64,000 nucleotides of DNA from Diadema antillarum (Eukaryota). The DNA lies in NCBI RefSeq assembly GCF_040938485.1, contig NW_027270909.1:3162001-3226000 (forward strand), read 5' to 3'. Below, in pieces: positions 17,401-64,000 of this stretch. The position numbers and the translations under genes were made by a program. Numbering within the stretch: position 1 is the stretch's first letter; every line of letters starts with the position of its first letter. The notes beneath the pieces were generated by a model. The model had not been told where the DNA came from and did not search any database. It saw only the letters and a program-made list of their open reading frames with translations.

Positions 17401-18278
17401 TTAAAGGTAGCGTACATTACACATGCGGGGTCAGAAAAGTGCGCGCAAACTTCAAGAAGAACACACAACACACACTCAGACACAGACAAACAGCCAGACA
17501 GACAGACAGACACAGACACACAGACACATAGAAACTTTACATAACCGAAGACGCAAATCATTTTGTTTTGTTTTTTTCCCAAATTTATTCTACTGGTAAG
17601 GTTTTTGTCTACAAAGCTTCAATTTGATATTACATAATATTTCATGATTTGTTTGCTTTTTTTTTTTGGTAATTTCTCATGAATAAATAGAAAGTAAAAT
17701 TTGAATCATGTGTTACTCTTTGTATAATGGAATTACATTGCAGTGAATCATTGAATCATAGTTAACAGTGTTTGCAAATTTATACATCAAGTATACCTGT
17801 CGCAGTCGTGTGCATAGTGCAGAGTTTATAGGACGGCCGATGGTCGTATTTAGATAAAGACATTATGCTTAATAGAAATAAGCACATAAAATATGTGTAT
17901 ATATACACTTTATACAAAATAATCGCGGATATATAAATATAACAATAATATTATGCAATATGAATATCAGAAAATGATACAGAAACAACGGACAATATCC
18001 TTAAATTTGCCACATAGTGGTTACATTATCAGCTAGGGCACACTTGACGTGGATTAGTACACTCAACAACGAGTGATATTAATAGGTTTCATTTATACAG
18101 CAGCTTGTATCTCTTACGAGAGAAATAAAAAAAAGCTGCACTTCCATTTTCTTTACGTATATTCCAGGAAAAATAAAATAAACTGTCTACATGACAAGGC
18201 ATCCTAGAAAGAAATGTTAACATTGTACAACGTACATGAACACTGATGAATAGTGAATACAAAGAAGACAGAATAAAT

Positions 18279-18967
18279 GTGACCGTGCACCTCAAAACGA
18301 ACATAAAGTCGAACACACTGATTTTGCGTGAGGACTGAAAATAAGTGAAATGCGTCAACCTAGCCGAACTTAACTTTTTTATATTTTCTGAAAGAGCGGG
18401 TCTCCTTTTACATTATGCTAAAATTTGGTATCATAAAACGGGCAGGAAAGTGTGTTTTTTAGCAGTTTATCTCAAACATTTTTGGTAGAATAGTGTGATT
18501 AGGTGTGTCTTTAGAATCCTTTTTTCATTTCTGAAAAACCTTGTCCACACTCTTCACTTTCAACTCTAATAACTTTTGAAAGGATGGTGCTACTGCTTTG
18601 AAAGTTGGCATTAATTATGGACAGAATGTGTTAATAAGGCATGCTTAATTTCAATTTAATCTGATAATCCCTTCATTGTTGTTACTCTGGTGGTTTACTT
18701 CCTGTTTTTTTGTCCCATTCATCGCACAGCCAGCACAGTTTGGTAAAGATTAAGCGCTTGAATAGACACTGTACTTCAGAGCCTCTTTTCTCAGTTCACA
18801 CTTTTCCTGAGTTTGTGCTTTCTTTCCAATATTTAGATAGGTTAGGAGAGTCCATTTGATTTGAGTTATACATCATTCTAAAGCTTAAAGTCTGCTCTTT
18901 CAGAATATGGTCTTAACTAAAAATTCATAGCTGGCGACTTTTTGTTTGTTTTGACGTGCAGGGTCAC
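18279..18967 (+). mobile_element. Sola1-like MITE, 689 bp
   Basis: About 33-bp TIR GTGACCGTGCACCTCAAAACGAACATAAAGTCG / CGACTTTTTGTTTGTTTTGACGTGCAGGGTCAC; 4-bp TSD AAAT, fitting the AWWT preference of Sola1; close copy at 32152-32842. Confidence 0.8.
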
Positions 18968-19860
18968 AAATAATGATTACAAATAAGATGCCTCCAAGTC
19001 GCATAAAATCATGATAACTGGAAAAGAAAATCCAGGAATATTTTCAAATAATATAATAAACACATGAACTAAAAATGAGAATGGCAACTTCTCATTTTCT
19101 GTATTTTTTGCTTTATCAAACTTTTGTTTTTATATATAATTGTATGGGTTGTCAAGATTCATACAAACATCAAAACCATATTCATATAACGTGTAAAAAC
19201 AAAGGAGAAAAACGTTTTTTCCCTTCTATTGCATTTTCTCCTTATGAATCCATGCTATAATCCACCTTCATATTCTACATCGAAGACGTGCTATGATGCT
19301 TATTTGTTTTATAACAATTGAGTACTATAAAATGGACACAACAAAACACGTGTAAATCCCCCAGAGGCAACAAAACACGTGTAAATCCCTCAGAGGAAAC
19401 AAAAGCATAAACGAACAGTGAAAAAAATGAAACTGCCTCATATAATCCTTGAATCGATAACTACGAGCCACAATGGTTCGAAGAAAAATGCACTCCCAAA
19501 ATTGTTTAAATGATTTAGAATGTGTATTCAAACCTGAAAAAAAAAATTCGAATCTTATAAGAATGATAGCATCATTACATGTAAAGCGTTATATTCTTCG
19601 ATACTTTTTTTTTATCCGATGTCAGCTGCAGTATAAGAGCATCGTTACAATATTATATCTTTATGATATATCATATCACCACTGTACAGTAGACACAAAT
19701 TTGTGAAATTAGCACTAATGTTTATACTTTTTTTTTCATTTGCCATAAAGTGGCTAACAAACATGAGAACGAAAATACTTGTCCCAATTCATCACACAAA
19801 TATATATCAAAATTCTTTCCACTACTACTCCATTCCACTGAACTGCGATAAGATATTGCC

Positions 19861-20114: not shown

Positions 20115-20932
20115 CTAGAATCGCCTCATGCGCATACAGGCACATGACACGGGGACTTGAAGGGTCTTCTGCTCGTACCGGAAGTGGCCATCCACACACT
20201 GGGTCTTCTGCAGGACTTTCATGTTGTACATCACAGGTTGACATCGAAGGTTAGGATCCACTTCGTGTGTGTAAGGATCCAGACATGCCGAACATTGGCA
20301 CTGGGCCATAGTGATCGCCGTCGGGATACGGTCGGCATCGAAGCATTCCACGTAGGTCCACGGACACGAGCCGTCTTGGTTCGTGATCTCCGGACTTCCA
20401 GGGTTTGGTTGCGCTCCTACGGGGCAGTTCTGCGGGCTGGAGACGCCATCAAACGGACAGCTTGACTTATCGGCGAAGCCCATGTCACTGGTTGAGAGGT
20501 TGAAACTCTGTACAGCAAATGCCGGGGCCTTGGGGTAGAAGAGATTGGCGTTCATCTTCCTGCGGTGTGAATCTGCAGCGTCCAGGGGTAGACACGTCTG
20601 AGCGACAGTCTTGACTTGTGAAGAGTTGACTATTTGCAAGATCGTAGCCACCAGGGCGACTTTGATACATAGACCCTTTAAACAGAAAAAAAGACAATAA
20701 GCTCCAGTAAATTTCAAGATTTAAATTCACAATAGGGGGCCTAATGGTTCATATTTACTCCGTCACAGTACACAACAAAAGATTTGCATTGAACAAAACA
20801 CTCTCGTTAACAGTATATCAAACGACAACTTACTTAGCAACAGTTGGAAAGATTAATTTTAGAGCATGACACTTAATGAAAGTTGAAAATGGAATAATAT
20901 ATAACATATACTAATATATGTATGTATTTATG

Positions 20933-20981: not shown

Positions 20982-21283
20982 CCAATACATACATAGTGTA
21001 TTATATACAAATAGTATGTACATAAGATTATATAATATATATAGGCCTATATAATGTATTTACATAGTGTACGTGCTGGTAATAAAGTTTGATATGAAAA
21101 TAAAGTACACTATTTTCTCGAAGTGCGAAGCTTTTAACCTACACACCTATATATAAATCAATCAACTGATGATTAAAATCCACAAGGAATAATTGAATTG
21201 TAAAAAGACAACAAATTTGCCTCATCCTTAAGATTTTTGTTTTGTTTTAAAATTACGATTTGAATTCGTATACTTACTTTCAT
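20115..21283 (-). CDS. IL17: Interleukin-17 family cytokine, gene A; join(21283..21278, 20675..20115), 188 aa
   Basis: ATG AAA|GTAAGT donor, 602-bp intron, pyrimidine tract and AG acceptor. The product starts with a signal peptide MKGLCIKVALVATILQIVNS. IL-17 cystine-knot motifs are present: CPW, D-x-x-R-I-P, AQCQCSAC, RCQPV, KVL, YEQ, VPVSCAC. Confidence 0.93.
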
Positions 21284-21668: not shown

Positions 21669-21910
21669 GTACGTTCGACCATTAGTGTGTTCCCATGTGT
21701 TCTCATGCTGCACTAGATGCGTAAGACGGAGTATCGGGACAAGCCCAAGTACCGAACAAACAACAAAATGTATCCTGTTATGCTAGCAGCTCAATGGATT
21801 ATAAGAGAGATACTTATGGACGAATTTAGGAAGTTGTCATCAATCACTTGAACATCTTCTTTAGTATTATTGCGGCCTTGGAAAGAAATAGTCGAATGAA
21901 AATATGAAAT

Positions 21911-23378
21911 GTGACCGTGCATCACAAAACCAACAAAAAGTCGCACGCACTTATTTTGTGTTAGGACTGAAAACAGGTGAAATGTGTCAACCTAGCTAAT
22001 CTTGAAGTTTGCATATATTATATCATGAAAGAGCAAGTCTTCTTCTACATTTTATAAAAATTCGGGATCATAAAACGAACTGGAAATTGTGCTTTTTAGC
22101 AATTTTTTCTCGAACATTTTTTTTTTGGTAGAATAGTGTGATTACGTGTTTCCCATAGAGTCCTCTTTTCATTTCGTTAAAACCCTGACCATACTCTTCG
22201 CTCTCAATTCCAATAACTTTAGCAAGAATCATGCTACTGCTTTAAAAGTCGGCAATAATCATCTACATAATGTGAAAAGGGTCACAAAAGTGACCCTGCA
22301 TACAAAACCGAGAAAAAAGTCGCCAAACATGTTTTTTTTTTAAATAATAAGAGCAGATTGTAAAAGAACAGACTTTAAGCTTTAAAATGATGTATAACTC
22401 GATTCAAATGGGCTCTTCCAACCTATCGAAATGTTGGAAAGAAAGCACACACTCTGGAAAAGTGTGAACTGATAAAAGAGGCTCTGAAGTACGGGGTCTA
22501 TTCAGGTGCTTAAAGGCATCGTATAATTTTGGTTGAGACCTAAGTTCAGGTTTCTGACACTTTTTGGTGAGATAATGAGAAACCTTTTATGAAGTATGAA
22601 AGAGCATGTAATTCCATGAGGAATTCAACGTTTATTTGATGAAAATTGGTTTTGAAATGGCTGAGATATCCAAAACAGAGTGATTCAATAAAGTGTGGAA
22701 CCCACTTTTCATTACGATCGCTTTGTTTTACTTTGTTTTTGGATGTTTCAGCCATTCCAAACCTGATTTTCATCAAACAAACTTTGAATTCCTCTTAAAA
22801 TGGTATGCTCTGTACTATTTCATAAGTGTTTTCTTGGTATCACACAAAAAGTTCAAAGCCCAATTCTCATCTCCACCAATAATGGGACAAAAGACACAAT
22901 GTAAACCACCAGAGCAACAACAATGAAGGAATTATCAGATTAAGGAGAAATTGAGCATGCTGTATTAACACATTCTGTCCATGATTAATACCAACTTTAA
23001 AAGCAGTAGCACTATCCTGTCAAAAATTACTAGAGTTGAAAGTGATTATAATATAATATAGCCCCCTTTTACATTTCTTGAAAATCCTTTGAGCACCTTT
23101 CACTTTCAAATAATGACAGAATAATCATAAAATACATACTTAATCTCACTACTTTTACAAAAAAGGTTCTAGAAAAACTGCTGAAGACACACTTTCCCAT
23201 TCATTTTATGATCCCCAAATCAAGAATGATAGAGAAGAAGGATAGCTCTTTCAGAAAATATGAAAACCCCAAGATTGACTTCGTTGACACGTTTCACGGT
23301 ATTTTTTTTTTTTTTTTTTGAGTCCTCACGTAAAATCAAGGGATGCGACTTTTTGTTGGTTTTGTGATGCACGGTCAC
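21911..23378. mobile_element. Composite of two Sola1-like MITEs (21911-22285 and inverted 22290-23378) with a nested Kolobok-like MITE (22514 to about 22878)
   Basis: Outer AAAT duplication; internal GGGTCAC-AAAA-GTGACCCTGCA junction; AGGCATCG element inserted at a TTAA site. Confidence 0.65.
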
Positions 23379-24956
23379 AAATTATATGTGAAAAACCATG
23401 AAAATCTTTAAATCAAGTTTTGGTGGCCCGAAATAAAAGCCATGAAAGCAATCCAGTTTGAATTTTGGTTGCCGATCGGGCCACCAAAATAGAAGTTTCA
23501 TGACCCGACACCAAATTTTAGTGGTACCGGGCCACCGAGCCAACCCTAAATATGAAACCCAGTGTAGATTACATAAAAATGAAAGGAACAGTACACTGCA
23601 AACGCAATCCTTTCCAAATTTCAGTTTTATGAGATCTTGATTGGCAGTGTGTTTTCCATGTTCAGGCCTCTATTTGAATTTGTCCCTCTTTTTTCTAATG
23701 CTGATTTTTATTCAATCTGAAGACATTACTAAGTTGAAATTTTCTCTGTAAAAGTGACAGTGGGACATAATTATAAAAGAGTCAGCAACCGGAAGTATAT
23801 ACATGCCACTATCATTATGATGACATACAGTAAAGAAGCAGCTCACCTGGACACTTGTGAGATCTTTCATAATACCCTATGCAGTCACAACTAGATATGC
23901 CAAATGTTTGGCGAACTGTTTCCTCCGATAAAAAAAGTAAATATGAAAAAAAAATGTATATCCATCAACGCAAACTTAACACAATCAGACAAATTTCCAG
24001 ATGACTTATGATTAATTTTGACCGTCAATATGTTCGTATTACTCGGTTGCCTTTTCCACTATTAGCTTTCGTCTTTTTCCGTTTCTTTTTTTTTTTTTCA
24101 TTTCTATTTTCAGCACCACAGCAGCTGCATGAAACACTTCTCTTCTGTAAGAGTTGAACAATTTGTGGTTTATTGATAAGTATAATTAGAAGTTCCATAA
24201 TACATGTATATAATAAAATCGAGCTTACCCTTATTTGGCATCGTTGTGCGTGATATTTTCATAATGTGTCACGAGAGTTTAGTGACTCTCGTGTATTTTT
24301 ATAGCACTTCTTCATGTGCAAGCTGCCATTAAAACAATGCTGCATTCTTATTCAAATGTCATCTTTACTTCGCAGTGGCAATCTAACTAATCAAAGATAA
24401 TACCACAGTTGAGATCTTTGCTCTCCTTTATGAACAATGAACTGACCTCTTCTTTATAAAGACATTCATGTACCACAATGATCTAGATGTGTCTTGCGGA
24501 GGGTCAGACCAGATAAAATCAGCGGAAAACGGTACGATACGAACTGTTAAATCTCTCTGTTTTCCTCCAACACAAATCTAGAGTAACACAAGGAAGATAC
24601 ATCGCCTGCCTGGGATTGATTCTTATCCAATCAATAAAATATTGTCGTTATCGTGATTAATATCACAACCCGAAAGGGAAAAACGATTACATGGATAACA
24701 TGGAATAACTGCACGTTTACAGTATAGGACGAGTAACGACGTCAATTTTGCACTGTCGTTGAGAATTCAGTCACATCCTGAAAAACAGAAATCACATTGG
24801 ACTTCTCGCAAAGGCACAATTGTCATGAGAAATAGGGGGTCCACCTAATTATTTTACAATGATTAACATAGTTATGCAAATGTGTTTATCTGCACATTTT
24901 TCTGCCCAATTGTTAAAACATTTGGTAATGATATAGGTCGAGGGTGAAGGTAAAAA

Positions 24957-25554: not shown

Positions 25555-26374
25555 ATGAATGTAAGTAATGTGAAGCTCGTCTTTGAGAAAGTAGGTTTAC
25601 CTATTGAGAAGATTATCATGAGCGATCACATGATGAATAATACAACCAGTTTCATTCAGTGAAGCAACGAATATGTCTGTGGGCCTTTGAGATTTTAAAA
25701 CCATTTTTTTTTCATAAGAATTAGAATGATATGTCTACAAGCATGATATAGAGTCAGCCATCGGAAACTGCTATTCCAAGGTGAAATAAAAGTATTTATT
25801 TGTTCCTCTTTTGTTTTGAATACAGAGCGCATATCTTATAGCATCATTAATTGCGACAATCTTCGGAGCTGTCATGTCTTCGCCGATCCCGAGCACCTCT
25901 CAGGCATGTCTCCCCACGGACGCTGCTGACGTCCACCGTCGAGAAGTGAGTGCGGAATTATTCTATCCTAACTCTGCGGCATTCGCCGTACAGAGTTTCA
26001 ACCTGTCTGCCAGTGACATGGGCCTGCCCGATACGTCAAGCTGTCCGTTTAGTGGCGACTCCAGCCCGCAGGCCTGCCCTGTAGGAGAGAAACCAAACGC
26101 TGGAAGTCAGGAGAACCAAGACGCCTCGTGTCCATGGACCTACGTGGAATGCTTCGATGCTGACCGTATTCCAATGGCGATCACTATGGCCCAATGTCAG
26201 TGTTCGGCATGTCTGGATCCTTACACACACGAAGTGGATCCCAACCTTCGATGTCAACCTGTGATGTACAACATGAAAGTCCTTCAGAAGACTCAGTGTG
26301 TGGATGGCCACTTCCGGTACGAGCAGAGGACTCTTCAAGTCCCCGTGTCATGTGCCTGTATGAGACGAGCATAA
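25555..26374 (+). CDS. IL17: Interleukin-17 family cytokine, gene B; join(25555..25560, 25826..26374), 184 aa
   Basis: ATG AAT|GTAAGT, 265-bp intron, TACAG acceptor in phase 0; signal peptide MNSAYLIASLIATIFGAVMS; complete IL-17 domain. Confidence 0.93.
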
Positions 26375-31300: not shown

Positions 31301-32151
31301 CAATGCAACCAGCGTAGGTCAAAGGTCTGGCCCCTCAGAATTTGCGGGAAAGTCTCAACAAAATTACATCAAATATTTATTCCTTTACACGGAAACAGGG
31401 ACAATAGTGCTCTACGACTAGATAAAGTAAGAGGAATAATCATACAATTAGGCACTGTCTCCGCATAGACATGTAAAAAGTTACACAGCTGGCTATTAAA
31501 AACATCAAGAAATATTGAAAACCTTTCATTGCTCGATATTCGTGCGTGGTCCATTTATAGAATATGAATATGAACAAAATAATGTATTTATTCAATATTG
31601 ATAAGCAAATTTCATGGTATGTATTATAAAACATTTGTTATGAAGATCAACGGTAGTTTGAATGAAGTTAGGTATATGGAGTAATACTATGTATCTGAAT
31701 GATATCCCAACTAGGCTATTTGTTGTTGACAAAAGATTTCATAGGTATGACGGAGAAGAAGAAAGGTTTTTTGTTAATATTTCTAAATGAAAGATCTGCG
31801 ATATCAAGTATGTGGTTTTACCAATAACATAAAAGCATCTGATGTTTTGTTGATACCAACTATTACCGTTGGGCGAAAGCAAAAGCCCAAGGGTAATTTG
31901 TAAAGGCAACTTTTTTATTGCTTTTTTCACGAAAGAGAAATATGAAAGTTTATTGTATTGTGAAAAGATCACAAATTTGAATGTAATTTGGGAGGAAGTA
32001 TTAAAAAATTAACATACATAGGAAAACGGAATAAAGCATTTTTTTTTTCAAAGATATGCTGTAGTTTAAACAAAAACAGTTTGTTCGGCAATGTAATGAC
32101 CCACATTTATATAATGTTTGTGATTGTAGGAAAGGCATCCAGCATCCATAT

Positions 32152-32842
32152 GTGACCGTGCACCTCAAAACGAACATAAAGTCGCACACACTGATTTTGC
32201 GTGAGGACTGAAAATAAGTGAAATGGGTCAACCTACCCGAACTTGACTTTTTCACATTTTCTGAAAGAGCGGGTCTTCTTTTACATTATGCTAACATTTG
32301 GTATCACAAAACGGGCAGGAAAGTGTGTTTTTTTTAGCAGTTTATCTCGAACATTTTTGGTAGAATAGTGTGATTAGGTGTGTCTTTAGAATCCCTTTTT
32401 CATTTCTGAAAAACCTTGTCCACACTCTTCACTTTCAACTCTAATAACTTTTAAAAGGATAGTGCTACTGCTTTGAAAGTTGGCGTTAATTATGGACAGA
32501 ATGTGTTAATGAGGCATGCTTAATTTCAGTTTAATCTGATAATCCCTTCATTGTTGTTACTCTGGTGGTTTACTTCCTGTTTTTTTATAACTTCCATCGC
32601 ACAGCCAGCACGGTTTGGTAAAGATTAAGCGCTTGAATAGACACTGTACTTCAAAGCCTCTTTTCTCAATTCACACTTTTCCTGAGTTTGTGCTTTCTTT
32701 CCAATATCTAGATAGGTTAGGAGAATCCATTTGATGTGAGTTATACATCATTTTAAAGCTTAAAGTCTGCTCTTTCAGAATATGGTCTTAACTAAAAATT
32801 CAAGTCTGGCGACTTTTTGTTTGTTTTGAGGTGCAGGGTCAC
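32152..32842 (+). mobile_element. Sola1-like MITE, 691 bp, unit 1 only
   Basis: Same TIRs as 18279-18967; TSD ATAT. Confidence 0.8.
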
Positions 32843-33109
32843 ATATTATGTACTGTAAGATGAATCGTTCTTTTTTTTCAATTTAAGAAATAGGTAAAAT
32901 GTGTTTTCTAGAGTCGATGCTTTTTTTATTATCATTGGAGCTAAGAAAATGAAAATGGGTGATATGGTAAATTTGGCATTTTGGAGTATTTATGAAGTGT
33001 TGATTATGAGAAAATTAAACAGGGAAGGACAAAAGGAACAGCTATTAATGATTTTGTGTTTGCTTGGTGTTTTTTTTTTCCGGAGAATTAGTGTTTTCAT
33101 AGATGCTGG

Positions 33110-33760: not shown

Positions 33761-34774
33761 ACTATGAGAAAACGCTGGAGTTTAACAGTCTGAAGATTAT
33801 TTCACACTGTGGTGTGGTTTTTCACAGAGTATTCATTATCAATGTATTGTTCCACACTGTGAATTAATGATTCATACCTATAAATTGATGATTCACTATT
33901 GTGTTCATACTGTTGATATGCTCGAATTTATCAGTGTGAAGAGATTTCACACTGTGTTTACAATGTTTTCACACTGTGTTTCACTTAGTGTTTCACATTG
34001 TGGGACACTGTGTTCTTTCCAGCAGGGGTATTTGCAGTATTTTGAATGCAATTGCGAACACATTTCAGGTCTCAAATATATGTGTGTAAAGCGTAGCAAG
34101 TATGGCGAAACCGGAAGGAGGGGGAGGGGCAGACTCTACCTTTCCTTTCCTTTTCTAGGGGGAGAACATCTGTACATTTTAGTCGACATACTTACATTTT
34201 AGTTGCCATTTATCATTCACTATACTTTTCACCCCCAAAAGTCGGATTCTGATATTTCCTTGTTTTCTTGATATAGCAATAAGTTATCAGTAAGATATCC
34301 GTCTTTGTATAAGCCGAATTGGCCTTGCTTCCGTTTGTACGGCTTTGGTTTTTTACCACTGCAAAACAAAAAATACTCCTACTGGTAAATTTTCTGGGAC
34401 TCTTAATTTTCCTTTTGCATTAGTATCTTTACCTGTGTGTTTGAGTTTCTCTCATAAATGTTGTTTCAGGAAGATAAACTCTGTCGAGTGACAGATCCTT
34501 TAGAGTTACAAACTGTTTAACTCAGGGCTTCTCTCTATCTAAAACATTTCATCACATGATCTGTGTCACCAAATAGTGACTTCCGAAGTTTTCTTTAGTA
34601 TTCTTGCAATGAGTACTTTTGTTAGATAGAACTTTGGTCAGTTCCAAGATAAAGATTAGATCATTAAAAAATCCAGTTTGCTATTTTTTTAAGTGGAACA
34701 ATAAGTGTACTTTTAAGAAGGCTATTTTTGGATCTATATGTACATATTGTAATCTATTTCTGGCAACATCTCCA

Positions 34775-34962
34775 GGGAATTCCCTTGCCCTGGGAATAGT
34801 TTCATATTTGAACAGGGTGTACAGACGATGTGTCTTAGTTTAAACAGCGCAAAATTAGAGCTCGGGATGTCTATGATAGCGTGCGGGAAGGAACTAGGAA
34901 GTATGAAGACACGTTCCGTGTCAGGTGACATAATCTCCATCCGGTAAGCTGATGATATAAAA
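34775..34962 (+). promoter_or_regulatory. IL17-C proximal promoter
   Basis: Palindromic kB site GGGAATTCCC at 34775-34784; TTTCATATTTGAA; GGTGACATAA; CATCCGGTAA (ETS-like); TATAAAA at 34956-34962. Confidence 0.7.
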
Positions 34963-35153
34963 CTCGTCAGTGTGGGGTTTTCTCCATCATATTAAGCCTG
35001 TATGCTAGAACATCCAGAATATCACTGAGCATTTCTTGCCTGGATGATACCTCGACGTCAACCTACTTCGTGGAGAGGACTCGTAAACGTCTCAATTGGA
35101 AAGGCACGTTGTTATACTGCAAGAAACAAGAGGACTTCAACACCACGCTCAAA

Positions 35154-36221
35154 ATGAATGTGAGTCCTACCATCACTTTAGTTTGACATTCAAGAAGAGT
35201 CGTGCCATTATGATTATCTTACCAGCACACCTGACATTGACAGTTGCGATCGTTGCAATTACAATTCCGCATGGTATTTCAGTTGACTGCCTGCGCTCGT
35301 CTTTCATCTAGCAAACACTCGAAAATTTTGTCGCGGTGTACCCTATGTACTAGATTCAATTTATTTTGCATTTGTCAACTAATGCAGGTTAATGTATTTC
35401 TGCAAAAGTCGTGTGTAATTTGTCTATATCAAGAAACAAAAGGAAAATATTTATCGTAATTAAATATTCCATTTAAATGATTTCCCATTTGCATTGAAAC
35501 TCCGTTACTAGTTGAAATGCGAATAGTATTCAAGCTGTTTTCCACTTATCATGTTTTCTGCATTGAAATTAGCAATTAGTTTGATATGATTTTATCCATA
35601 TGGACGTATGGACGTATCATTTACCAATCTCTTATCATTTTGCCTCATCAGACCCTACTTCTACTTACGTCGATGGCAGCAGCAGCAGCAGCTATCATCC
35701 AGACCGTTACGTCGTCACCAGTCCCAAGCACCTCTCAGGCATGTCTGCCAATAGACGCAGCTGATTCCTATCGACGAGAAATGAACTCTAATCTGTTCTA
35801 TCCCAAAGCGGCAGCATTCGCCGTACAAAGTTTCAACCTGTCGACCAGTGATATGGGCTTGGCCCACACGTCGAGCTGTCCATTTGATGGCGTCTCCAGC
35901 CCGCAGAACTGCCCCGTAGGAGCGAAACCAAACGCTGGAAGTCCGGAGATCGTGAACCAGGACGGCTCGTGTCCATGGACCTACGTGGAATGCTTCGATG
36001 CCGACCGTATCCCGATGGTGATCACTATGGCTCAGTGTCAGTGTTCTGCATGTCTGGATCCTTACACACACCAAGTGGATCCAAACCTTCGATGTCAACC
36101 TGTGATGTACAACATGAAAGTCCTTCAGAAGACCCAGTGTGTGGATGGCCACTTCCGGTACGAGCAGAGGACCCTTCAAGTCCCTGTGTCATGTGCCTGT
36201 ATGCGCATGAGGCGAGCATAA
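35154..36221 (+). CDS. IL17: Interleukin-17 family cytokine, gene C; join(35154..35159, 35652..36221), 191 aa
   Basis: ATG AAT|GTGAGT, 492-bp intron, CATCAG acceptor; signal peptide MNTLLLLTSMAAAAAAIIQTVTS; complete IL-17 domain. Confidence 0.93.
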
Positions 36222-36812
36222 GAGGCCAGCTGTTGGTGAAATATCCATGTCTTGAGTTCTTGCTCCAATGTATTCAGTATTGACTGTTCAAATATTTTTA
36301 CTGTATTCTTGTAAGATGTGCTAAACTCCAGTCTTGCCTTACACCTTGTGCTCTACAAGAGCCATCTAGCTCTAACTAAAACTGAATTGTTGTTAAGACA
36401 TTTCTTTCTAAAAATTATTTATTATTAGCTGATGTAATTAGGCTTTTATGTAAATGAGCAAGAAGTTTGTTTGTATAAATGACGCTGATCGACTTTCTCC
36501 GTTCATTTTTGACGATGATTACATAGCAAATCGATGAATATTTTTGATTTATACGTTATAACGGAAAGTGGAAATTCAGAAAATCTGAAATTAGTGACGA
36601 TTACATTCGAAAAGGAAAAGGTAGAATTTAATTTGACTTAAAAACAATTACAGCTGCAGCGGTAGTTAGATAGATGATTCGAAGTTCATGATTTATTGTC
36701 TTTTTCATTAAAACGAGAGGTAGAAATTATATTGTAGATTGTTGTTGTTTTTTCAAGATGATTTGTTATGTAAAATTGCAATGTATCTCTTGTGTTATAG
36801 TATTTTTCTTAA

Positions 36813-37374
36813 ACAACAAGTTCATCTTTATATACATGTGGATTAAGTAAATGCAGCAATATCATTAGAACACATTAGTGAAAGTTTGGGGAAAATCGTA
36901 CGATCCGTTCAAAAGTTATGCATTTTTAAATCATCTGTGCAGTCACTGCTGGATAAGAAAGAAGTCTACTACTGTGTATGATGTCACAAGCATACATCGA
37001 TATAAGGAAGATGTAAATAGAATTTCACAAAAACTTTTAGTTTTTTTGAATAAAGTGCACATTTCCTCAATCTGTCACTGATGTATATTAAGGGTAATAT
37101 TATTCCCCCTGCCTTCTGACAGAGGCAAGTCAAGCGTTCTTATATCATTCGAGAAAGTGAAAATATGTTGAATTGTCTTTATATTTTATTTACATCGTTA
37201 TAATTATACATGTGACATCACAAGCAGTAATCTTATCAAGCAGTGACTTAGCAAAAACTTCAAAAATTCAAAACTTTTGAACGGGTTGTCCAAATTGTCC
37301 TCAACCTCTCGCTGATGTGTTCTAATATTGCTGCATTCACTTTATCCACATGTCTAGGAAAGTGATCTTGTCCT
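36813..37374. mobile_element. Kolobok-like MITE shared by units 2 and 3
   Basis: Follows TTAA at 36809-36812; TIRs containing AATGCAGCAATATCATTAGAACA and its reverse complement; empty TTAA site in unit 1 at 27011-27014. Confidence 0.75.
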
Positions 37375-38043
37375 TTCATCTTGTTAGGAGGATACTGTTA
37401 GACGCTTAAGACCCAATTCTACTACTGTGTATACATAATGGATCAATCAGTTCTCTTTCTCTTTAAACACATAATGTTCAAATTTCAATCTAATCATCAT
37501 TCTAGTTTTTGACAGTTTCCAACCTGCATTTGTATGTGTCATTAGGACGTGATCTCTGTGTGTGTGTGTTACTTTTTGAGTTCTCTGTATATTGTAATTT
37601 GCGAAGCCTGTAACAGAAATGTAGGCTCTATTACTCAATGTTTGAGTACGGGAAAAAAAGTCAAGTGTGACGTCATGCATTACATGTATCCACTATGTGG
37701 CATAATGTTGTTACCTTCTGGAAGAAAAGCTGTATTCCTATTAAAGTGTGCAGTTATATATATTCATATATTTATTTATACGTATCACAACCCACCTATT
37801 TATGTGTTAATGTATGTATTAGCCTCTGTACAATAAACTGACTGTAATATTATGTATTTTACTGTTTTGTATATTGTAATGACTCAAAAAGTAGATGGAG
37901 TTTCGAAAAAGTAATATGTGTGTGTGTGTGTGTGTGTGTGTGTTTTGTGTCACATTTTAAGTCAGATGTAAACTTCTGGAATATGAAACCGTGGAAAAAA
38001 AAAAACATTTAACCTATATAATGACTGTCAAGGGTGTTTAGAT

Positions 38044-53581: not shown

Positions 53582-54761
53582 GATATATCATTTCAGTGAA
53601 TATGTGTAAGATTTAGGGTGTGTGCTCAGTGAGAAGAGAAGTGAGTCAACATCGGTCAACTCGGTCTTATCTCTCAGACCGAGTAGATACATACATCATT
53701 CAACATAATTTTGATGTAATCATGTAGGCCTACTTGAAATAACACAAACACAAACACACACACACCCAAACAACATACACATGTAACGCAAGTAACACAC
53801 ACACACACACACACAAACGTAACGTGCGTATACACAGCCAGAGCCAGAAACAAGCACGCATCACAAAAAAGGAAGAAAATTTCTACTCGTTAAGAAGAAA
53901 TCGTGAAAGAAACAATATAATGACGTAATAGAATACCGTGTTTTCATTTAAAAAATGAGCGGTTTGAGGTAAATGATTATTTGAAAACAATTTCTAGATA
54001 TCACTTGACAAAAGTTTAAAAAAGTTGGTCCTACGTAGGGACGGAGTTTTTAATTTGGGTTGTGAATTCATTTCAAGATTTACAGGTATTATAATCATTG
54101 TTTATCTATACCATTTACCCGAATATGAGAATTAAAGTGAAGAATGCATTCGATCCAAGATTTGAAATATTCGCGATTTGTAACTCGGAGTTCTAAACAC
54201 ACAAGTATGAAATAATGTTGACTTGAATCTTCTCCCTTGGGGGATTTATCAAAAATGATCGTAACAGCTTGACGTCCAGTGTGTACTGTAATTTCTTCTG
54301 TCAAGGTGTTTTCGTTCTAATGCAGGGGCATAATAATAAGAAACTGCTACGTCTTACAAGTGAACTGTGTACCTTGCCCTTATATTCAAATATTAATTTA
54401 ATAGACTACTAACAGGAGGCGCCACAGGAAGATTTTAGCTCTACTGATTTTTTTTTCAAGATTTCTTCACAACTGCTCAACTTTGTACCTTACAACGTAC
54501 GTTTCTTAGTTTTCATTGATGTCCTTATACTCTTCTTTCGGGAGGGGGCGGTATTATATCTAAGACTCCTAACCGGAGGCGCCAGAAGTAGATTTCTGCT
54601 GAGCTGAAACAATAATATTTGAGAGAAGACGTTTCATAACTTTTGTTCCTCGCTAATCAAATAGGCCTGTGCAAATTATGGACACCTGGCAGTGATGGGT
54701 AACTAGATTTAGAGGACCTTGTCGACGAGCAGTTGAAATATCGAAGAGAACATGAGCCATG

Positions 54762-55767
54762 CCCTTATGGAACAAACACAGTGTTACCACTGTCAATGTA
54801 TTCACATATTTAACTATGTGTAAAATGTGTGAATATAGTGTGTTCACAGTTTTGACACAGTGTGAAATTACCAACTATGTGGTTCACCACATACAACTCA
54901 CGTAGTCATACAGTTACCACAGCTTACCACGTAATGGTCACAGTGTGTACTATGGTATAGTATGTGGGCATGGTGTGTTCAAAGAGTTGTCATAGTTTGA
55001 ATTTTCCGACTATGTGGTAAACCACATACTTATCATATGGTGACATGCAGTTAACTCATAATAGTCACAGTGTGTCACATATTGCAGTCTATGGGAATAG
55101 TGCCTCCACAGAGATGTCACAGTGTGAAACGATAAACTATGTGGTTTATCTCCTACTAGCCACATAGAAGTATACAGTTACCACAGCTATCACACAATAG
55201 CCACAGTGTGTTACATAGTCTGTGGGAAAGATGTGTTCACTTATACACAAATATTGTGTATTTAAAACTATGTGACTTACCACATGCTAAATCTGAAAGA
55301 AATCACAGTTACCACAGCTTACCATTGGCCAACGTGTGTCACATACTGTAATTTGTGAAATTTTGTGTGCCCACAGAGTTGCCACAGTGTGGAATTCTAG
55401 TCTATGTGGTTCTTCCCCAAAAGTCACAAACTAATCACAGTATCGCAGGACTATCACAAGACAATACAATATGCCACACAGCAGTACCTCACATGAGTAA
55501 CACACAGCAGTAGGTCCTACTGGAATAAACTAACAAACTAACATACCACACACATATTCCAAAATGTAATTGATAAATAAGTAATGCTGTGAATCATAAC
55601 AATTGATTTAAACAGTATTTAACCTGACATATGCTCCTGCAGTATTACCCATTTAGTTGGAGTGCTGAGGTACAGTATGTGATACTTCATGTGGTATTTC
55701 TGTGGTATTCCTATGGTATTCCTGTGGTACTCTTGTGGTAACACTGTATCACAAATCTTTACACAGG
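54762..55767. mobile_element. CMC/EnSpm-like CACAGT-array element, paralogous to 43056-44130
   Basis: Starts CCCTTATGGAACAAACACAGTGTTACCAC; inverted GTGGTAACACTGT near 55735-55750. Confidence 0.5.
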
Positions 55768-56016
55768 TTATGAATACTCATTAAAAGCAATCAAAATTTA
55801 AGAAAATACATAAAAGACTTTTAATTTCAGAGTATTTATGATGCGATTTACTTTGAACTTTATCATACATTGTCTAATAATATCATAATATTCCCAATGT
55901 CATAGATTTTGTTATGAAAATGTAATTTCATATGTTGATGGTAAAGTATTGTCAAGTTAGTAACCATACCTTAATGCATTACGAATAGATGGTCTGTACA
56001 TGTATATTATCATATT

Positions 56017-56224
56017 GAAGAGTTTGTTCGCAAAAACCGATAAGTCCATATTTGCCAAGTGGAGATATTTGTGATTAAAGATCAAGAAAAACAAAGAGAA
56101 TAATAAGAAAAATTTTGCTTCTTTTGACCATAACTTCAAAAATATATCTTTATATGTATGAACAATATATCATTTAAAAAGGTATTATTTTGTACTTTAT
56201 GACAGAGACCGTACTTCAAAATCT
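56017..56224 (+). mobile_element. 244-bp MITE family copy running into the gap
   Basis: Left TIR and interior match 41329-41572. Confidence 0.8.
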
Positions 56225-56401
56225 NNNNNNNNNNNNNNNNNNNNNNNNNNNNNNNNNNNNNNNNNNNNNNNNNNNNNNNNNNNNNNNNNNNNNNNNNNNN
56301 NNNNNNNNNNNNNNNNNNNNNNNNNNNNNNNNNNNNNNNNNNNNNNNNNNNNNNNNNNNNNNNNNNNNNNNNNNNNNNNNNNNNNNNNNNNNNNNNNNNN
56401 N
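56225..56401. other. Assembly gap (N run)
   Basis: Run of N. Confidence 1.
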
Positions 56402-56502
56402 AATCATGCGCTTTCCTCGCCAGGATAAAGCGTTTTTAGATCTATTGCCATTTTAGGTTTTTTATCACATTCACTTCTGTTCGTTTTTGATCAGTGACTA
56501 CC

Positions 56503-56600
56503 AGGAAAGGCTGGTTGACTATCAGGTAAAGTCTGATTGACTATCAGGAAAAGTCTGATTGACTACGGGAAAGACCGTTGACTATCAGGAAAGTCTGATA
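56503..56600. repeat. About 20-bp tandem repeat TGACTATCAGGAAAAGTCTGAT, about 5 copies
   Basis: Direct inspection. Confidence 0.8.
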
Positions 56601-56923
56601 CAGTATTCCATCACTGACAAGGCACAACTACTGGCTGGGATGTCTCTTTGGGGCCGGAGGTGTGAGGTTGCGTCAGTGAAAGACGAGATGAGGTGGGTCT
56701 CTGAACCGTTTATCTTCGTGATAGTAAATCGGAGCAATGACATTGGCAATGTAAGTCCATTGAAAAGCTATCAGGGATTCATTTTGTCATGTTTTTTTTT
56801 TTAACACTGAATTCATCCTTTCATCTTTGGCTCTTCATGGAGGGAACCAGTCCATGGATGCGTCGTTGCTACGCCTAACGCGCACAGACACACTGCGCGG
56901 TTACCATGCACTGTGGCACCAAC

Positions 56924-58775
56924 CTCTTCTTCTTCTTCTCGAGTCACTACGCAGAAAGGAACGTTAGATTCGTCCAGTCCAATGTTGGATGCACTGCCTG
57001 GCACAGGGCGTTAGAGCTGCCAGATCCTCCTGTGTGCAAGGCTCTGGTAGAAGTGGACAGACCAGGAGATGTTGCATAGTCTGCTCCTCTCCACACAGGC
57101 AGGTGGTGTCATCATTCTCACTATACCCCCACTTTGCTAGGTTAGATTTGCAGCGGCCGACAGCACTTCTTAGGCGATTGCAGCAGGACCAGAAAGGCCA
57201 TGCCTCACTGGCACCTGATGGTGTAGTTTCCTTAGGGCCGGTAGTAGACACTGTATGCGGTGTATGGGTAAGACGTTCAATCCACATGGATACACGCTGC
57301 TTGTCAGGGCTTTTGTTCAGGGCCTTTACAGAATGCATGAAGCTGCGCCTGGATTTTAGCCTCTTTCTTGAATGATCATGATTGAAGAGAGGGTGGCGAG
57401 GGTCATTTTCTTGCTTCAGCTTTTCCTTCTGGGATGCAACGGTCCTACGGATGCTTGGAGGAGCAATCCCACTCAGTAGGTAGAGGTCTTCAACCTTTGT
57501 GGGCTTTAGGCAACCAGTAATAGCACGACATGAAGAGTTTAGAACAGTGTCAATCTTAGTGGCATGAGCTGATCTACTCCAGACAGGTGACGCATACTCA
57601 GCTGTAGGGTAGCATAAAGCCAGTGCTGTTGTACGTACCGTCTTCGCATCAGCACCCCACTTCGTATAAGTGAGCTTTCGGAGGATACTTTTCCTTGATG
57701 CCACCTTTGCCTTGTTCTTAATGATGTGATCCTTGAAAGTGAGGGACCTGTCAAGTGTCACCCCCAGGTAGACTGGCTTGGATACATGTTGCAGGCGTTT
57801 CCCATACCAACTAATCCGTAGTTGACGGCTGGCTTCCCTATTCTTAAGATGAAACACACTGATTTGTGTTTTGTCTGGGTTAGCTCTTAGATGGTTGTTG
57901 GCATAGTAGGGAATGAGTAAGTCCAGTGCACTGGAGAGGGAGTCCTCTACTTCTTCGAAGGTGTCCTTTTGAGATGCAATGCAAAGGTCATCAGCATAGA
58001 GGAAGCGTCTAGTGTCTGGTTGAGTAGGTTGATCGTTTGTGTAGATGTTAAACAACAAAGGGGCAAGCACACTCCCTTAAGGAAGTCCGTTCTTCTGTGT
58101 CCTCCATCTACTCTTTCTACCACCGAGGTCTACGAAGAATCTGCGGTTTGATAGCATGTTGCAGATCAACTTTGTGAGTCTAACATCTGAGGTCATCTCA
58201 TACAGTTTCTTGGCAAGGATACGGTGATTGACTGTGTCGTATGCTGCAGAAAGATCGACAAAGGCAGCACCAGTGATTTTTCTGTTCTCAAAACCATCCT
58301 CGATGTACTGCGTGAGGTTCAGTAGTTGTCCTGTACATGATTTTCCCGGTCTGAAACCCGCCTGCTCCGGAATAAGGTGATCATCAACGAACAATGCTAT
58401 GCGGTTCAGGAGTTAATGGAGGCGTTCAAACAGCTTGTACATGTGGCAGAGTAGGGATATCGGCCTATAGCTCTTAGGGATGGCAGGGTCTTTACCAGGT
58501 TTCAGTAGAGCAATGACTTTTGCTTTCCTCCACATCTTTGGGATCTTGTTGGACTTAACACATTCGTTGACCATATCAAGAAGCCATCTGCGTGCACCTG
58601 GCCCGAAGTGTTTGATCTGTTCCACTAGGACATCATCAAGACCTGCAGCCTTGTTGTTTTTCATAGACTTCATTGCAGATTCCAGTTCACTCATTGTGAA
58701 TGGCCTTGTGAAACTTGTGGCGTCTTGTGAGGATGCATTAGCAGCTCTGGGAAGTTTAGCCCTCTGAGGACGGCA
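56924..58775 (-). mobile_element. 5'-truncated Vingi/Ingi-like non-LTR retrotransposon (RT pseudogene)
   Basis: ORFs 58413-58694, 58077-58394 and 56964-58070 are one frame split by two in-frame stops (ERLH*LLNR; GLP*GSVL). RT motifs: YRPISLL, QAGFRPG, FVDLSAAYDTV, YADD, YLGVTLD. C-terminal CxCx7Hx3C and a (GAA)n tail are present; there is no endonuclease or RNase H. Confidence 0.9.
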
Positions 58776-60934
58776 ACTACCAGACTAGACGCATTCCATC
58801 ACCGGCAGGTTAGTTTTGAAATCCGTCCGACCAGGAGCAGACATATATCCTTGTGTGTATGTCTGCTTCAGAAACGGATTTTAATCTTACATCACATCGA
58901 ATCCTGGTCGCTGATGAAGAATGTGATTACTAACCTGTTTGGTGTCTTGTTTCTAAATCATGCGCTTTCCTCGCCAGGAGAAAGCGTTTTTAGATCTATT
59001 GCCATTTTAGGTTTTTTTATCACATATACTGATACTCCCGATGACTAAGAATAGGAAGACTATTCTAGATCTATTTAGGACTACAATGGTAGAAGGCCGT
59101 ATGAGTTGTTTGATGTTATACATTAGGAGAAGGACAGATTATAAAGGTAGGGAAATGTTTGTACCGAAATTCATACTCGCCTATTAGGTAAATTATGATA
59201 CATTTCATTATGGCTATTGATTGTCCCAGATTTTTTTCCCGACTATGTTCGATAACACCGAGTGAAAGACTGTGGTAGATACCACAGTATGAGAGACTGT
59301 GGAAGATAACACCGTATGGGATGCCTCACTTTGACATACTGTGTTACCTACCACAGTATTCACCCTGTGATTTTCCACAGTGTGACAATAACACAGTATT
59401 ACCCTACGCCCCATTTCACAGGAAACCATAGTGTGAGATAAAACACTGTGTTTCACACTGTGAATCACAATGTGTGTTTAATATGTTGCAACGCTATGAC
59501 TATTCCAAAAGAGATAGATACAGTATGGATGATTAGACAGCAAACAGCTGACAAAAGGTTTTGAATACGATTTTTCACATGAAAAGCTTCATAAGGAGTG
59601 ACTTAAGGAAAAGCGATATGTTGGATGAATCATTGGAGAATGACAACACCTGAATTGCTGAGGTTGAACGGAGACGCTGTATGTGTATTGTTTGATTAAT
59701 AAATTTTATGTATAGTGCATTGTACATTTACAATCTAAATGTCTTCTGGGTGTGAGACCTTGACATTTTGTTGCAAACGGTGTACAAAATGCATAGGCGA
59801 GAGAGATCTCGAATCTGAACCTTCCCTCGCCCTGGTATTGCAGAATGCCATCATTCACACGGAGGTGCGATAGAACAAGGTCCGCCGGATTTTCGTATTT
59901 CCGCCAAGTTCACTGGACTGTCATTTTCTCCTCCTGTGGCAAGATCAAAATATTGTAAACTGATCCAAAAATGTAATCAATAGTTATTTTTGGAGTTAAT
60001 GATCCAAATGAGCTATTGTCCCATCTATGTTCAGAAGTGATATCCTTCTTTACAAACAACTATTTCCCCGTCGTGATCATCCACCTGTCGAATATAATAT
60101 TTGTAAAAAACTTCGACTCTTCACTTCAGTCAGGTCAATTCGCTTTGCTGATCAGCAGTGATCCTGGCCATTAATCATCTAAACAGAGTCTACATGCTGT
60201 TGTGTTGTGATAGTGATATAACTTTTAAAGATGTGAATACAAGGGAAGCCCCAAATACAGCACCGCAAAAATTGGGAAACCTGCTCATCGTTATGATCTA
60301 ATATCGTCTCATCGAATAAATTAAAGCTAAGTGAATGGTGAAAAAAACGCCAACGAATTCAAATGACGGAGTGACTTTCATACGGCTTTGTATGCCTTCT
60401 AGACTACGTTACCGATAAATTTTAAACAGATACGGAGTAGTAACTGCATCAAAAAAAAAAAAAAAAACAGAGGGCAAGCACATGGGTTACTAACAAAATA
60501 GAAATGGATATACTTACAACTTCAGACTTCGGACAACTATAATATACGTCAGCAGTGTAACAATGACATCAGACACTTCGGAGAATCCCGCAGAATTTTG
60601 ATTTCGCAGAAGGGAAGTTCCATTTCCGTCTACTCAAAGAATACTTAACAATACAACAAACGAAGAGGAAATCTACCACAACATCCGTAATTTATAATAG
60701 TGCGGAATGCATGTGAAAGTACAGGTCATCAACGCACACGTATTCATGCAATCCAACTTGGTGTCAGGTAAAAAAATAACTGGTAAAATATCAAGCGCGA
60801 AAGTGACAGGGGTAGAGAGAAGAAATACTAATGTTATTAAAAGAAATGCCATTTTCGTTGGTAAAGCTTTACGTCTATTGCAAGTGTTGTTTCATTGTAT
60901 CAAACAGTTTTGAATCAGGTTTTGTTTAAGAGGA

Positions 60935-61330
60935 AGTGAATACCATTAAATTGATGTTACACATAACTTTCAAACTTCTGTATTTATGTTTAAGTAGACG
61001 CACAATTTGTCACTACAGTCCTTTCAAAACTTTTTTTTGATTACAATGCTTACATTCATTCGTACAATACAAGACGCTCAACAGATTTTCGTCTACATAA
61101 TCCAAAATCTCTTATAGCTCACAGGTCAGTGAGGCGTCACGGACCTGATACATGGAATGCTTTACCCGACTCCCTAAAGTCACGAACATCTCTGTTTTCT
61201 TTTAAAGCTACTTTAAAGAAATATATTTCAACTCAATATATTTCGTGAAAATAAAGTATAATGATTGATATGATTTTGTTCGTGTTTGTGTTTTGGTTTG
61301 AAATTGTTATTATCATTATATTGATATAAT
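60935..61330 (+). mobile_element. CR1/Crack-type LINE 3' fragment, unit 3 only
   Basis: NAYIHSYNTRRSTDFRL...GPDTWNALPDSLKSRTSLFSFKATLKKYI, then a stop and AATAAA. Confidence 0.75.
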
Positions 61331-63051: not shown

Positions 63052-63244
63052 CTGGTCAGTGTGGTGTTTTCTCCATCATCTTAATCCTGTATGCTAGAGC
63101 ATCCAGTGAACATCACCGAGCATTTCTTGCCTGGAAGATACCTCAACGTCAACTTGCTGCGTGGAGAGGACTCGTGTAAAACGGCTCAATTGGAAAAGCA
63201 CGTTACACTGCAAGAAACAAGAGGACTTCAACACCACGCTCAGA

Positions 63245-64000
63245 ATGAATGTGAGTCCTACCACCACTTTAGTTTGACATTCAAGAAGAGTCGTGCCATT
63301 ATGACTATCTTACCATCACACCTGACATTGACAGTTGGTATCGTTGCAATTACAATTCCGCATGGTATTTCAGTTGACTGCCTGCGCTCGTCTTTCATCT
63401 AGCAAACACTCGAAAATTTTGTCGCGGTGTACCCTATGTACTAGATTCAATTTATTTTGCATTTGTCAACTAATGCAGGTTAATGTATTTCTGCAAAAGT
63501 CGTGTGTAATTTGTCTATATCAAGAAACAAAAGGACAAGATTTATCGTAATTAAGTATTCCATTTAAATGATTACCTATTTGCATTGAAACTCCGTTACT
63601 AGTTGAAATGCGAATAGTATTGAAGCTGTTTTCCACTTATCATGTTTTCTGCATTGAAATTAGCAATTATTTTGACAAAATTTTATCCATATGGCCGTAT
63701 GGACGTAGCATTTACCTATTTCTTATCATTTTGCCTCATCAGACCCTACTTCTTTTTACGTCGATGGCAGCAGCAGCAGCTATCATCCAGACCGTCACAT
63801 CGTCACCAGTCCCAAGCACCTCTCAGGCATGTCTGCCAATAGACGCAGCTGATTCCCATCGACGAGAACTGAACTCTAATCTTTTCTATCCCAAAGCGGC
63901 AGCATTCGCCGTACAAAGTTTCAACCTGTCGACCAGTGATATGGGCTTGGCCCACACGTCGAGCTGTCCATTTGATGGCGTCTCCAGCCCGCAGAACTGC
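63245..64000 (+). CDS. IL17: Interleukin-17 family cytokine, gene E, 5' part; join(63245..63250, 63743..>64000)
   Basis: ATG AAT|GTGAGT, 492-bp intron; exon 2 is open for 86 codons to the window end (TLLLFTSMAAAAAIIQTVTSSPVP...SSPQNC) and nearly identical to gene C. Not in the ORF track. Confidence 0.9.

What the first reader, a model, noticed from the sequence alone, without database searches (positions are those of the whole stretch)
20124..20493. Sharp gene-conversion breakpoint inside exon 2 of the inverted gene A
Seen, comparing A with D codon by codon: from CLP to FNLS most conserved residues use different synonymous codons (ctg/cta, cca/ccc, gca/gct, tcc/tca, cat/cac, tat/tac, aaa/aag, ttc/ttt, caa/cag, tcg/tca). 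From ACC AGT GAC ATG (about 20492) onward synonymous sites are almost all identical until ATGAGGCG just before the stop. A's 3' UTR is then unrelated. Purifying selection alone does not homogenise silent sites. Inference: recent ectopic conversion of about 370 bp, covering the cystine knot, between oppositely oriented paralogues.
Basis: partly seen in the sequence, partly recalled or inferred. Interest (0 to 1): 0.75.

Follow-up and report, generated by a model that had tools for sequence, protein, structure and literature searches.

The report
Gene conversion in urchin IL-17 cluster
In a cluster of sea-urchin (Diadema) interleukin-17 genes, the part of each gene that encodes the cystine-knot cytokine core is kept alike among old, otherwise unrelated-looking copies by DNA copying between them, a well-known process seen here in a new gene family.

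Summary
The window is Diadema antillarum contig JBFRCO010000021.1. It carries an IL-17 (PF06083) cluster: A inverted, then B, C, D and a cut-off E in tandem.

A against D at silent sites:
- 77% differ 5' of about 20508.
- 12% differ 3' of about 20477 (Fisher 2e-12).
- The maximum chi-square break is at 20514 (p<=3e-4). Control pairs C-D and D-S19 show no break.
- Homology ends at the stop codon.

Silent-site constraint is excluded: Diadema against Lytechinus is saturated in the same tract.

The interpretation, ectopic gene conversion covering the cystine knot, is supported. It is not one recent A-D event:
- The D. setosum orthologue of A has the same break, so the first homogenisation predates the species split.
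- B has the same mosaic, and G has it with a different break.
- A differs from its closest copy (D) at 4.8% of tract sites.

Exchange continued after the split. Over five orthologue pairs, silent difference is 0.14 in the 5' part and 0.28 in the tract, where orthologues are no closer than paralogues (0.23). Short patches shared only by non-orthologous D. setosum copies point the same way.

This is a new case of a known process. No paper found describes it for IL-17 genes. The scan had noted this stretch, and B as a chimera, before.

The parts
20118..20675 (-). Exon 2 of IL-17 gene A (stop codon at 20115-20117). Encodes most of the signal peptide, the N-terminal region and the IL-17 cystine-knot domain.
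   Evidence: ORF and translation. Pfam PF06083 E=1.6e-17, residues 106-184, which is 20130-20366. RefSeq model P0024/P0001.
20124..20493 (-). Its 5' limit can only be placed within 20514-20461.
   Evidence: pS 0.12 against D here, 0.77 upstream. Maximum chi-square break at 20514. A-lineage-only states stop at 20514, with one at 20467.
20508..20675 (-). A-lineage-specific 5' part of exon 2. It is silent-site saturated against all other copies but carries no silent difference from the D. setosum orthologue.
   Evidence: pS 0.54-0.82 against the others, 0.00 against As. 29 of the 30 states exclusive to A+As lie at 20514-20675.
21276..21281 (-). Putative exon 1 coding part of A (ATG AAA followed by donor GTAAGT). 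An alternative upstream ATG lies at about 21299.
   Evidence: Sequence. Models P0001 (MK...) and P0024 (MSPLYNMK...). Same layout as SpIL17-1 in PMC5457136.
25874..26374 (+). Exon 2 of gene B, head-to-head with A. It shows the same mosaic: old 5' part, homogenised 3' part and proximal 3' UTR.
   Evidence: B-D pS 0.61 in the 5' part against 0.13 in the tract. Break at A-equivalent 20523. 3' UTR 100% identical to C/D for about 100 bp.
35586..36221 (+). Exon 2 of array gene C.
50699..51271 (+). Exon 2 of array gene D, the sampled copy closest to A's tract.
   Evidence: 17 of 352 differences from A.
63764..64000 (+). Start of exon 2 of array gene E, cut by the window end. Complete in L004 10001-10546.

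Best explanation
Gene A is an old, inverted paralogue in the Diadema IL-17 cluster. Its flanks, its intron and the first ~165 bp of exon 2 have their own long history. The remaining ~370-400 bp of exon 2, which encodes the whole cystine-knot domain, belongs to a sequence pool shared with B and the tandem array (C, D, E, H, I, F, G).

The pool is maintained by recurrent interlocus (ectopic) gene conversion. Homologous-recombination repair copies a stretch from one paralogue into another without regard to orientation. For A the tracts are bounded on the 3' side by the end of homology at the stop codon. On the 5' side they stop where A has diverged too far to pair, or where a converted N-terminus is selected against.

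Shown: the step in silent divergence, the tree conflict, the loss of orthology signal in the tract, and the shared break in two species.

Inferred: the repair mechanism, the reason for the boundary, and the timing. The first homogenisation came before the D. antillarum/D. setosum split, and further exchange followed it.
For: - Silent-site step, A against D: pS 0.77 then 0.12, Fisher 2e-12. The same step appears for A against C, H, I, F and G.
- Maximum chi-square break at 20514, p<=3e-4. Control pairs C-D, D-H and D-S19 show none.
- A's similarity to the other copies is confined to 20121-20602. Flanks are unalignable.
- Tree of the 5' part: (A,As) has 100/100 support on a stem of 0.40 substitutions per site, and (B,Bs) 99/100 on 0.33. 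In the tract tree both stems vanish and the tree is star-like. The 5' data reject A+D+H (AU p=3e-9).
- Five orthologue pairs between species: pS 0.142 in the 5' part, matching noncoding 0.138, but 0.278 in the tract (Fisher 2e-4). Paralogues within D. antillarum: 0.55 in the 5' part, 0.23 in the tract. In the tract, orthologues are no closer than paralogues.
- A against As: 0 of 41 silent sites differ in the 5' part, 21 of 77 in the tract (p=7e-5).
- Short runs of states are shared only by non-orthologous D. setosum copies: As+S17 at 20145/20142/20139 and S17+S19 at 20337/20336/20333.
- Silent sites of the tract are saturated between Diadema and Lytechinus, so constraint cannot explain the similarity.
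- C-D has no lower dS in the tract (0.22) than in the 5' part (0.12), so the tract is not intrinsically slow.
- The structure is the same on both haplotypes (99.5% identical) and in the independent D. setosum assembly, so it is not an assembly error.
Against: - No sampled copy is identical or near-identical to A's tract. The best is D at 4.8%, and A has 6 private changes there. No donor or fresh event is seen for A itself.
- The tract data do not reject an (A,As) clade (AU p=0.30).
- The PHI test inside the tract is not significant (p=0.6-0.9). The many incompatible sites could partly be recurrent mutation.
- A-As silent difference in the tract (0.27) is only modestly above the 3' flank's noncoding difference (0.19-0.22).
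- The arrays were sampled incompletely: 9 D. antillarum and 8 D. setosum copies.
Confidence: 0.85

Rival explanations
1. One ancient chimeric event only. Before the two Diadema species split, the 3' part of A's exon 2 was replaced once, by conversion or by a partial duplication landing in frame. Nothing has been exchanged since, and A's tract has simply diverged from the array.
For: - The break is the same in A and its D. setosum orthologue.
- A and As carry 6 and about 8 private changes in the tract, roughly what one lineage accumulates since the split.
- AU does not reject (A,As) in the tract.
- PHI inside the tract is not significant.
Against: - A-As silent difference in the tract (21 of 77) is twice the noncoding level, against 0 of 41 in the 5' part.
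- About 11 of the A-As differences are at sites where both states occur among array copies.
- A is closer to D/H (17-19 differences) than to As (28).
- The excess recurs in 4 of 5 orthologue pairs.
- As shares an exclusive three-site patch with S17.
Confidence: 0.11
2. No exchange at all. The tract is similar because silent sites there are constrained (codon bias, RNA structure, splicing signals) or mutate slowly. The 5' part is free or mutates fast.
For: - The tract encodes an extremely conserved protein core.
- GC3 is somewhat higher in the tract (0.55-0.65) than in the 5' part (0.41-0.50 in array copies).
Against: - Diadema against Lytechinus dS in the tract is saturated.
- Orthologue pairs differ more, not less, in the tract than in the 5' part.
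- C-D and D-S19 show no drop in the tract.
- Silent difference among cluster copies in the tract (0.05-0.5) is at or above the neutral interspecies level.
Confidence: 0.02
3. Assembly artefact: reads from array copies were collapsed into A, producing a false chimera.
For: GCA_040938485.1 is an uncollapsed, highly duplicated assembly (PMC13511894).
Against: - The same mosaic is present on the second haplotype contig, with 2 differences in the tract.
- It is also present in the separate chromosome-level D. setosum assembly.
- A carries private substitutions inside the tract.
Confidence: 0.01

Closest known systems
Interlocus gene conversion / concerted evolution confined to coding parts of paralogues (for example the long-lasting mammalian gene pairs in PMC2720389, and Caenorhabditis paralogues in PMC3966223)
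   Same: - Step change in silent divergence inside a gene.
- Paralogues as close as or closer than orthologues in the tract.
- Flanks with a different, older history.
- Tracts of a few hundred bp.
- Works between inverted copies.
   Different: - Here at least five old lineages and two species share one homogenised module.
- Diversity inside the pool (dS about 0.3) is larger than the interspecies neutral distance, so copies do not cluster by species.
- No fresh tract is seen for A itself.
SpIL17-1 tandem array of Strongylocentrotus purpuratus (Buckley et al. 2017, PMC5457136)
   Same: - Echinoid IL-17 genes in a tandem cluster.
- Two exons, the first encoding Met plus one residue.
- Very similar cystine-knot domains, with diversity concentrated at the N-terminus.
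   Different: - That paper ascribes the similarity to lineage-specific tandem duplication and does not mention conversion ('concerted' and 'conversion' have 0 occurrences).
- Orthology of the Diadema cluster to a particular Sp subfamily was not established here. The best S. purpuratus hit is 50% identical.

Membership tests
Interleukin-17 family (Pfam PF06083) | Significant match to the IL17 domain profile above the curated cut-off | tested here: met
   A, B, C and D score 64-65 bits against a cut-off of 24, E about 1e-17, covering profile positions 3-81 of 81.
Interleukin-17 family (Pfam PF06083) | Conserved cysteines of the cystine knot, and a secreted protein with a signal peptide | tested here: inconclusive
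   Cysteines align with Lytechinus and S. purpuratus IL-17 proteins. A hydrophobic N-terminus is present. No structure or signal-peptide prediction was run.
Echinoid two-exon IL-17 gene type (SpIL17-1-like) | Exon 1 encodes Met plus one residue, and exon 2 encodes the rest | tested here: met
   ATG AAA | GTAAGT at 21281-21276 and an acceptor before 20675. RefSeq model P0001. Description in PMC5457136. There is no transcript evidence: none was listed.
Interlocus gene conversion | Abrupt change of silent-site divergence between paralogues within a continuous alignment | tested here: met
   pS 0.77 then 0.12, Fisher 2e-12. Maximum chi-square p<=3e-4. Controls negative.
Interlocus gene conversion | Conflicting phylogenies on the two sides of the break | tested here: met
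   The (A,As) stem is 0.40 in the 5' part and absent in the tract. The 5' data reject A with D+H, p=3e-9. Topology within the tract is unresolved.
Interlocus gene conversion | In the tract, orthologues between species are no closer than paralogues within a species | tested here: met
   Orthologue pS is 0.278 and paralogue pS 0.23 in the tract. In the 5' part they are 0.142 and 0.55.
Interlocus gene conversion | An identifiable donor with a (near-)identical tract | tested here: not met
   The closest copy to A is D, with 17 of 352 differences. Short exclusive patches are seen for other pairs: As-S17 and S17-S19.
Interlocus gene conversion | GC-biased outcome in the tract | tested here: inconclusive
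   GC3 is higher in the tract in Diadema, but Lytechinus shows the same contrast.

The most novel reading that the evidence does not exclude
The cluster evolves as two modules under different regimes, kept that way by selection. A lineage-specific promoter, UTR and N-terminal module stays distinct for tens of millions of years. Conversion keeps the receptor-binding cystine-knot module interchangeable among all copies, inverted ones included, so that every ligand stays matched to the few IL-17 receptors. The near-coincident breaks of A and B in both species (20514-20541) would then mark a selected or recombination-prone boundary rather than chance.
Probability: 0.25. Interest if true: 0.55.

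Novelty: new member of a known kind. Interest (0 to 1): 0.4.

Why it matters
Sea-urchin IL-17 genes are early regulators of gut immunity, and their tandem arrays have been read as simple lineage-specific duplications.

If the cystine-knot part is homogenised by conversion, three things follow:
- Trees built from the IL-17 domain misdate the duplications and hide orthology. A, B, F and G are recognisable as old lineages only from their 5' parts and flanks.
- Subfamily counts across echinoids need re-reading.
- The functional difference between copies should be sought in regulation and in the N-terminus, not in the receptor-binding core.

For D. antillarum, a species of conservation concern after mass die-offs, this gives a defined immune locus whose copies can be told apart by their 5' parts.

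Tried and rejected
- PHI test for mosaicism inside the tract: not significant (p=0.86 for D. antillarum copies, 0.61 for all copies). About 36-42% of informative site pairs are incompatible, with no spatial clustering. This neither shows nor excludes patchy exchange.
- AU test of an (A,As) clade on the tract: not rejected (p=0.30). For (B,Bs) it is borderline (p=0.058).
- RNA evidence for A's expression and splicing: no RNA run was listed.
- GC-biased conversion signature: uninformative, because Lytechinus shows the same GC3 contrast.
- A common break for all lineages: rejected. G/S17 break near 20600 and C-E near 20625-20540, not at 20514-20541.
- Literature search for gene conversion in IL-17 genes: nothing found.
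- The large HMMER search, structure prediction and fold search were not needed. Pfam and named RefSeq relatives settle the family.

Full report
**What is there**

The window is 100% identical over 53764-64000 to L004, a locus from contig JBFRCO010000021.1 of the Diadema antillarum assembly GCA_040938485.1. That places the window at about 3,162,001-3,226,000 of the contig.

It holds five open reading frames of one family:
- A at 20115-20717 on the minus strand.
- B at 25874-26374, C at 35586-36221 and D at 50699-51271 on the plus strand.
- A fifth copy, E, cut by the window end at 63764-64000.

All match Pfam IL17 (PF06083) at 64-65 bits against a cut-off of 24. RefSeq names their products interleukin-17-like.

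The array continues beyond the window with H, I, F and G. A second contig, JBFRCO010001822.1, is 99.5% identical over 17.5 kb. It is the other haplotype of an uncollapsed assembly (PMC13511894).

A's gene model has a first exon encoding Met-Lys (ATG AAA | GTAAGT at 21281-21276) and a second exon from 20675. This is the layout described for SpIL17-1 in S. purpuratus (PMC5457136). No RNA run was listed for the locus, so 'exon 2' rests on models and splice signals.

**Check of the observation**

The codon-by-codon contrast is real.

| Measure, A against D | 5' part | Tract |
|---|---|---|
| Silent sites differing | 33.3 of 43.5, at 20675-20508 | 9.5 of 77.3, at 20477-20118 |
| Raw identity | about 0.7 | 0.93-1.00 |

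The silent-site contrast has Fisher p = 2e-12.

A maximum chi-square scan puts the break at 20514, p<=3e-4 by permutation. The control pairs C-D and D-S19 give no break.

A self-comparison of the window shows that A resembles the other copies only at 20121-20602. B-E share kilobases of flank with each other.

Similarity to B-H ends after ATGAGGCGA. The final codon and stop of A's D. setosum orthologue (GTC TAG) are the type also found in the distal copies I and F; A itself has TTC TAG, one base off.

**Is it constraint rather than exchange?**

No, for three reasons.
- Between Diadema and Lytechinus variegatus the tract's silent sites are saturated (dS of 3 or more).
- Within Diadema, pairs of similar age show no dip in the tract. 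C-D has dS 0.12 in the 5' part and 0.22 in the tract.
- Orthologues show the reverse pattern, as described in the next section.

**The sister species changes the reading**

D. setosum (GCA_964275005.2) has an orthologue of A, called As here (L005 10001-10519). It has the same head-to-head neighbour, Bs.

In the 5' part, A and As share 29 states found in no other copy, all at 20675-20514. In the remaining ~400 bp they share one, at 20467.

As breaks against the D. setosum array at 20523. B and Bs break at 20523-20541. G and its orthologue S17 break near 20600. So the mosaic is older than the species split and is not peculiar to A.

Trees say the same:
- In the 5' part, (A,As) and (B,Bs) are fully supported clades on stems of 0.40 and 0.33 substitutions per site.
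- In the tract both stems are gone and the tree is a star.
- The 5' data reject A grouping with D and H (AU p=3e-9). The tract data do not reject (A,As) (p=0.30).

**Evidence for exchange after the split**

For five orthologue pairs (A-As, B-Bs, G-S17, F-S17b, I-S21) the silent difference is 0.142 in the 5' part. This equals the noncoding A-As difference of 0.138. In the tract it is 0.278 (Fisher p = 2e-4).

Paralogues within D. antillarum average 0.55 in the 5' part and 0.23 in the tract. In the tract, therefore, orthology leaves no trace. Every copy is about equally far from every other.

For A-As alone, 0 of 41 silent sites differ in the 5' part and 21 of 77 in the tract (p=7e-5). About 11 of the differences fall at sites where both states occur among array copies.

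A is nearer to D and H (17 and 19 differences in 352) than to As (28).

In D. setosum, As and S17 alone share three adjacent states at 20145/20142/20139. S17 and S19 alone share three at 20337/20336/20333. These look like short conversion patches.

**Cautions**

- A's tract has six private changes and no near-identical donor. For A itself, nothing recent is demonstrated.
- PHI within the tract is not significant.
- The 3' flank of A is 19-22% different between species, so local rate variation could account for part of the excess in the A-As pair taken alone.

**Mechanism**

The best reading is recurrent interlocus gene conversion, with concerted evolution confined to the 3' two thirds of exon 2.

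For A, homology ends at the stop codon and fades upstream of about 20514. Heteroduplex formation can therefore only span the region between them, which would make the boundary self-reinforcing. Selection for a distinct N-terminus is an alternative reason for the boundary. The reason for the boundary, and the repair pathway, are inferences.

Inversion of A relative to the array is no obstacle to conversion. It would turn any crossover into an inversion rather than a deletion. The I-F-G block is in fact inverted between the two species, but I did not map those breakpoints.

**Comparison with what is known**

Conversion limited to coding parts of paralogues is well documented, including between inverted copies (for example PMC2720389 and PMC3966223).

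For echinoid IL-17, Buckley et al. 2017 describe tandem arrays of near-identical genes with N-terminal diversity. They attribute the arrays to lineage-specific duplication, and the words 'conversion' and 'concerted' do not occur in the paper.

Searches for IL-17 together with gene conversion found nothing relevant.

This is therefore a new example of a known process, with practical consequences for how IL-17 subfamilies are dated and counted.

**Earlier notes of the scan**

The scan had already noted this same stretch. It had also noted that 'gene B is a chimera marking the left edge of the array'. My analysis agrees that B is a mosaic of the same kind.

**Limits**

- No N run was touched.

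Noticed in passing
window 35796-37400 against L004 (gene E region): C and E are duplicates about 5% apart over 6.3 kb, but not uniformly. There are 15-30 differences per 100 bp at 34400-35000 and about 5 per 100 at 35400-35800. From 35796, inside exon 2, there are only 0-3 per 100 for at least 1.6 kb downstream. This points to a large recent conversion or unequal crossover starting inside the exon.
   Followed up: partly
window 20508-20675 against L005 (As): The A orthologues of the two species have no silent difference in 41 silent sites of the 5' part, but four amino-acid changes. Noncoding DNA around them differs by 8-20%. Binomial P(0) is about 0.002-0.03. Unexplained: chance, nucleotide-level constraint or positive selection.
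   Followed up: partly
L010, L002 (D. antillarum) against L011, L012 (D. setosum): The distal block I-F-G has the array's orientation in D. antillarum. Its orthologues in D. setosum (S21, S17b, S17) lie in reverse order and on the opposite strand. This is an inversion of a three-gene block between the species, possibly through recombination between inverted IL-17 copies.
   Followed up: no
L011 4661-5160 (D. setosum): An unannotated IL-17 copy, the orthologue of F by its 5' part, has an in-frame stop (MAQ*KCSAC). It is likely a pseudogene that still sits in the conversion pool.
   Followed up: no
window 18277-18975, 32150-32850, 21907-22274, 22881-23379: A ~700-bp dispersed repeat. Two copies are 94.9% identical, one 1.1 kb downstream of A and one between B and C. 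There are older partial copies in both orientations between A and B. The element is also present at 94% identity in D. setosum (L005 13345-14045). It is probably a transposable element.
   Followed up: no
window 56964-58070 (-): A 368-aa ORF between D and E that I read as reverse-transcriptase-like, next to an N run at 56225-56401. A nearby called gene on the other haplotype (L003 4314-4931) hits Pfam RVT_1. It is probably a retrotransposon fragment inside the array; the ORF itself was not scanned.
   Followed up: no
L013 10674-11173 (+) and 16327-16826 (-), Lytechinus variegatus: Two oppositely oriented neighbouring IL-17 genes differ at only 14 of 360 tract sites (dS 0.13) and are also alike in the 5' part. 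This is a recent inverted duplication or conversion in another echinoid.
   Followed up: no
window 25874-26374 (B) against L005 4592-5104 (Bs): D. antillarum B has two in-frame 6-bp deletions and many private changes at A-equivalent 20477-20390. D. setosum Bs lacks them and is only 12 differences from array copy S19. The middle of B was overwritten in one species and not the other.
   Followed up: partly
L002 1-532 (F) and window 20560-20540 (A): F, and its D. setosum orthologue, share with A the codons for R-K-M/I-N-A-N (AAGATGAACGCCAA), which the other array copies lack. This is either an old exchange in the 5' part or shared ancestry of the A and F lineages.
   Followed up: no
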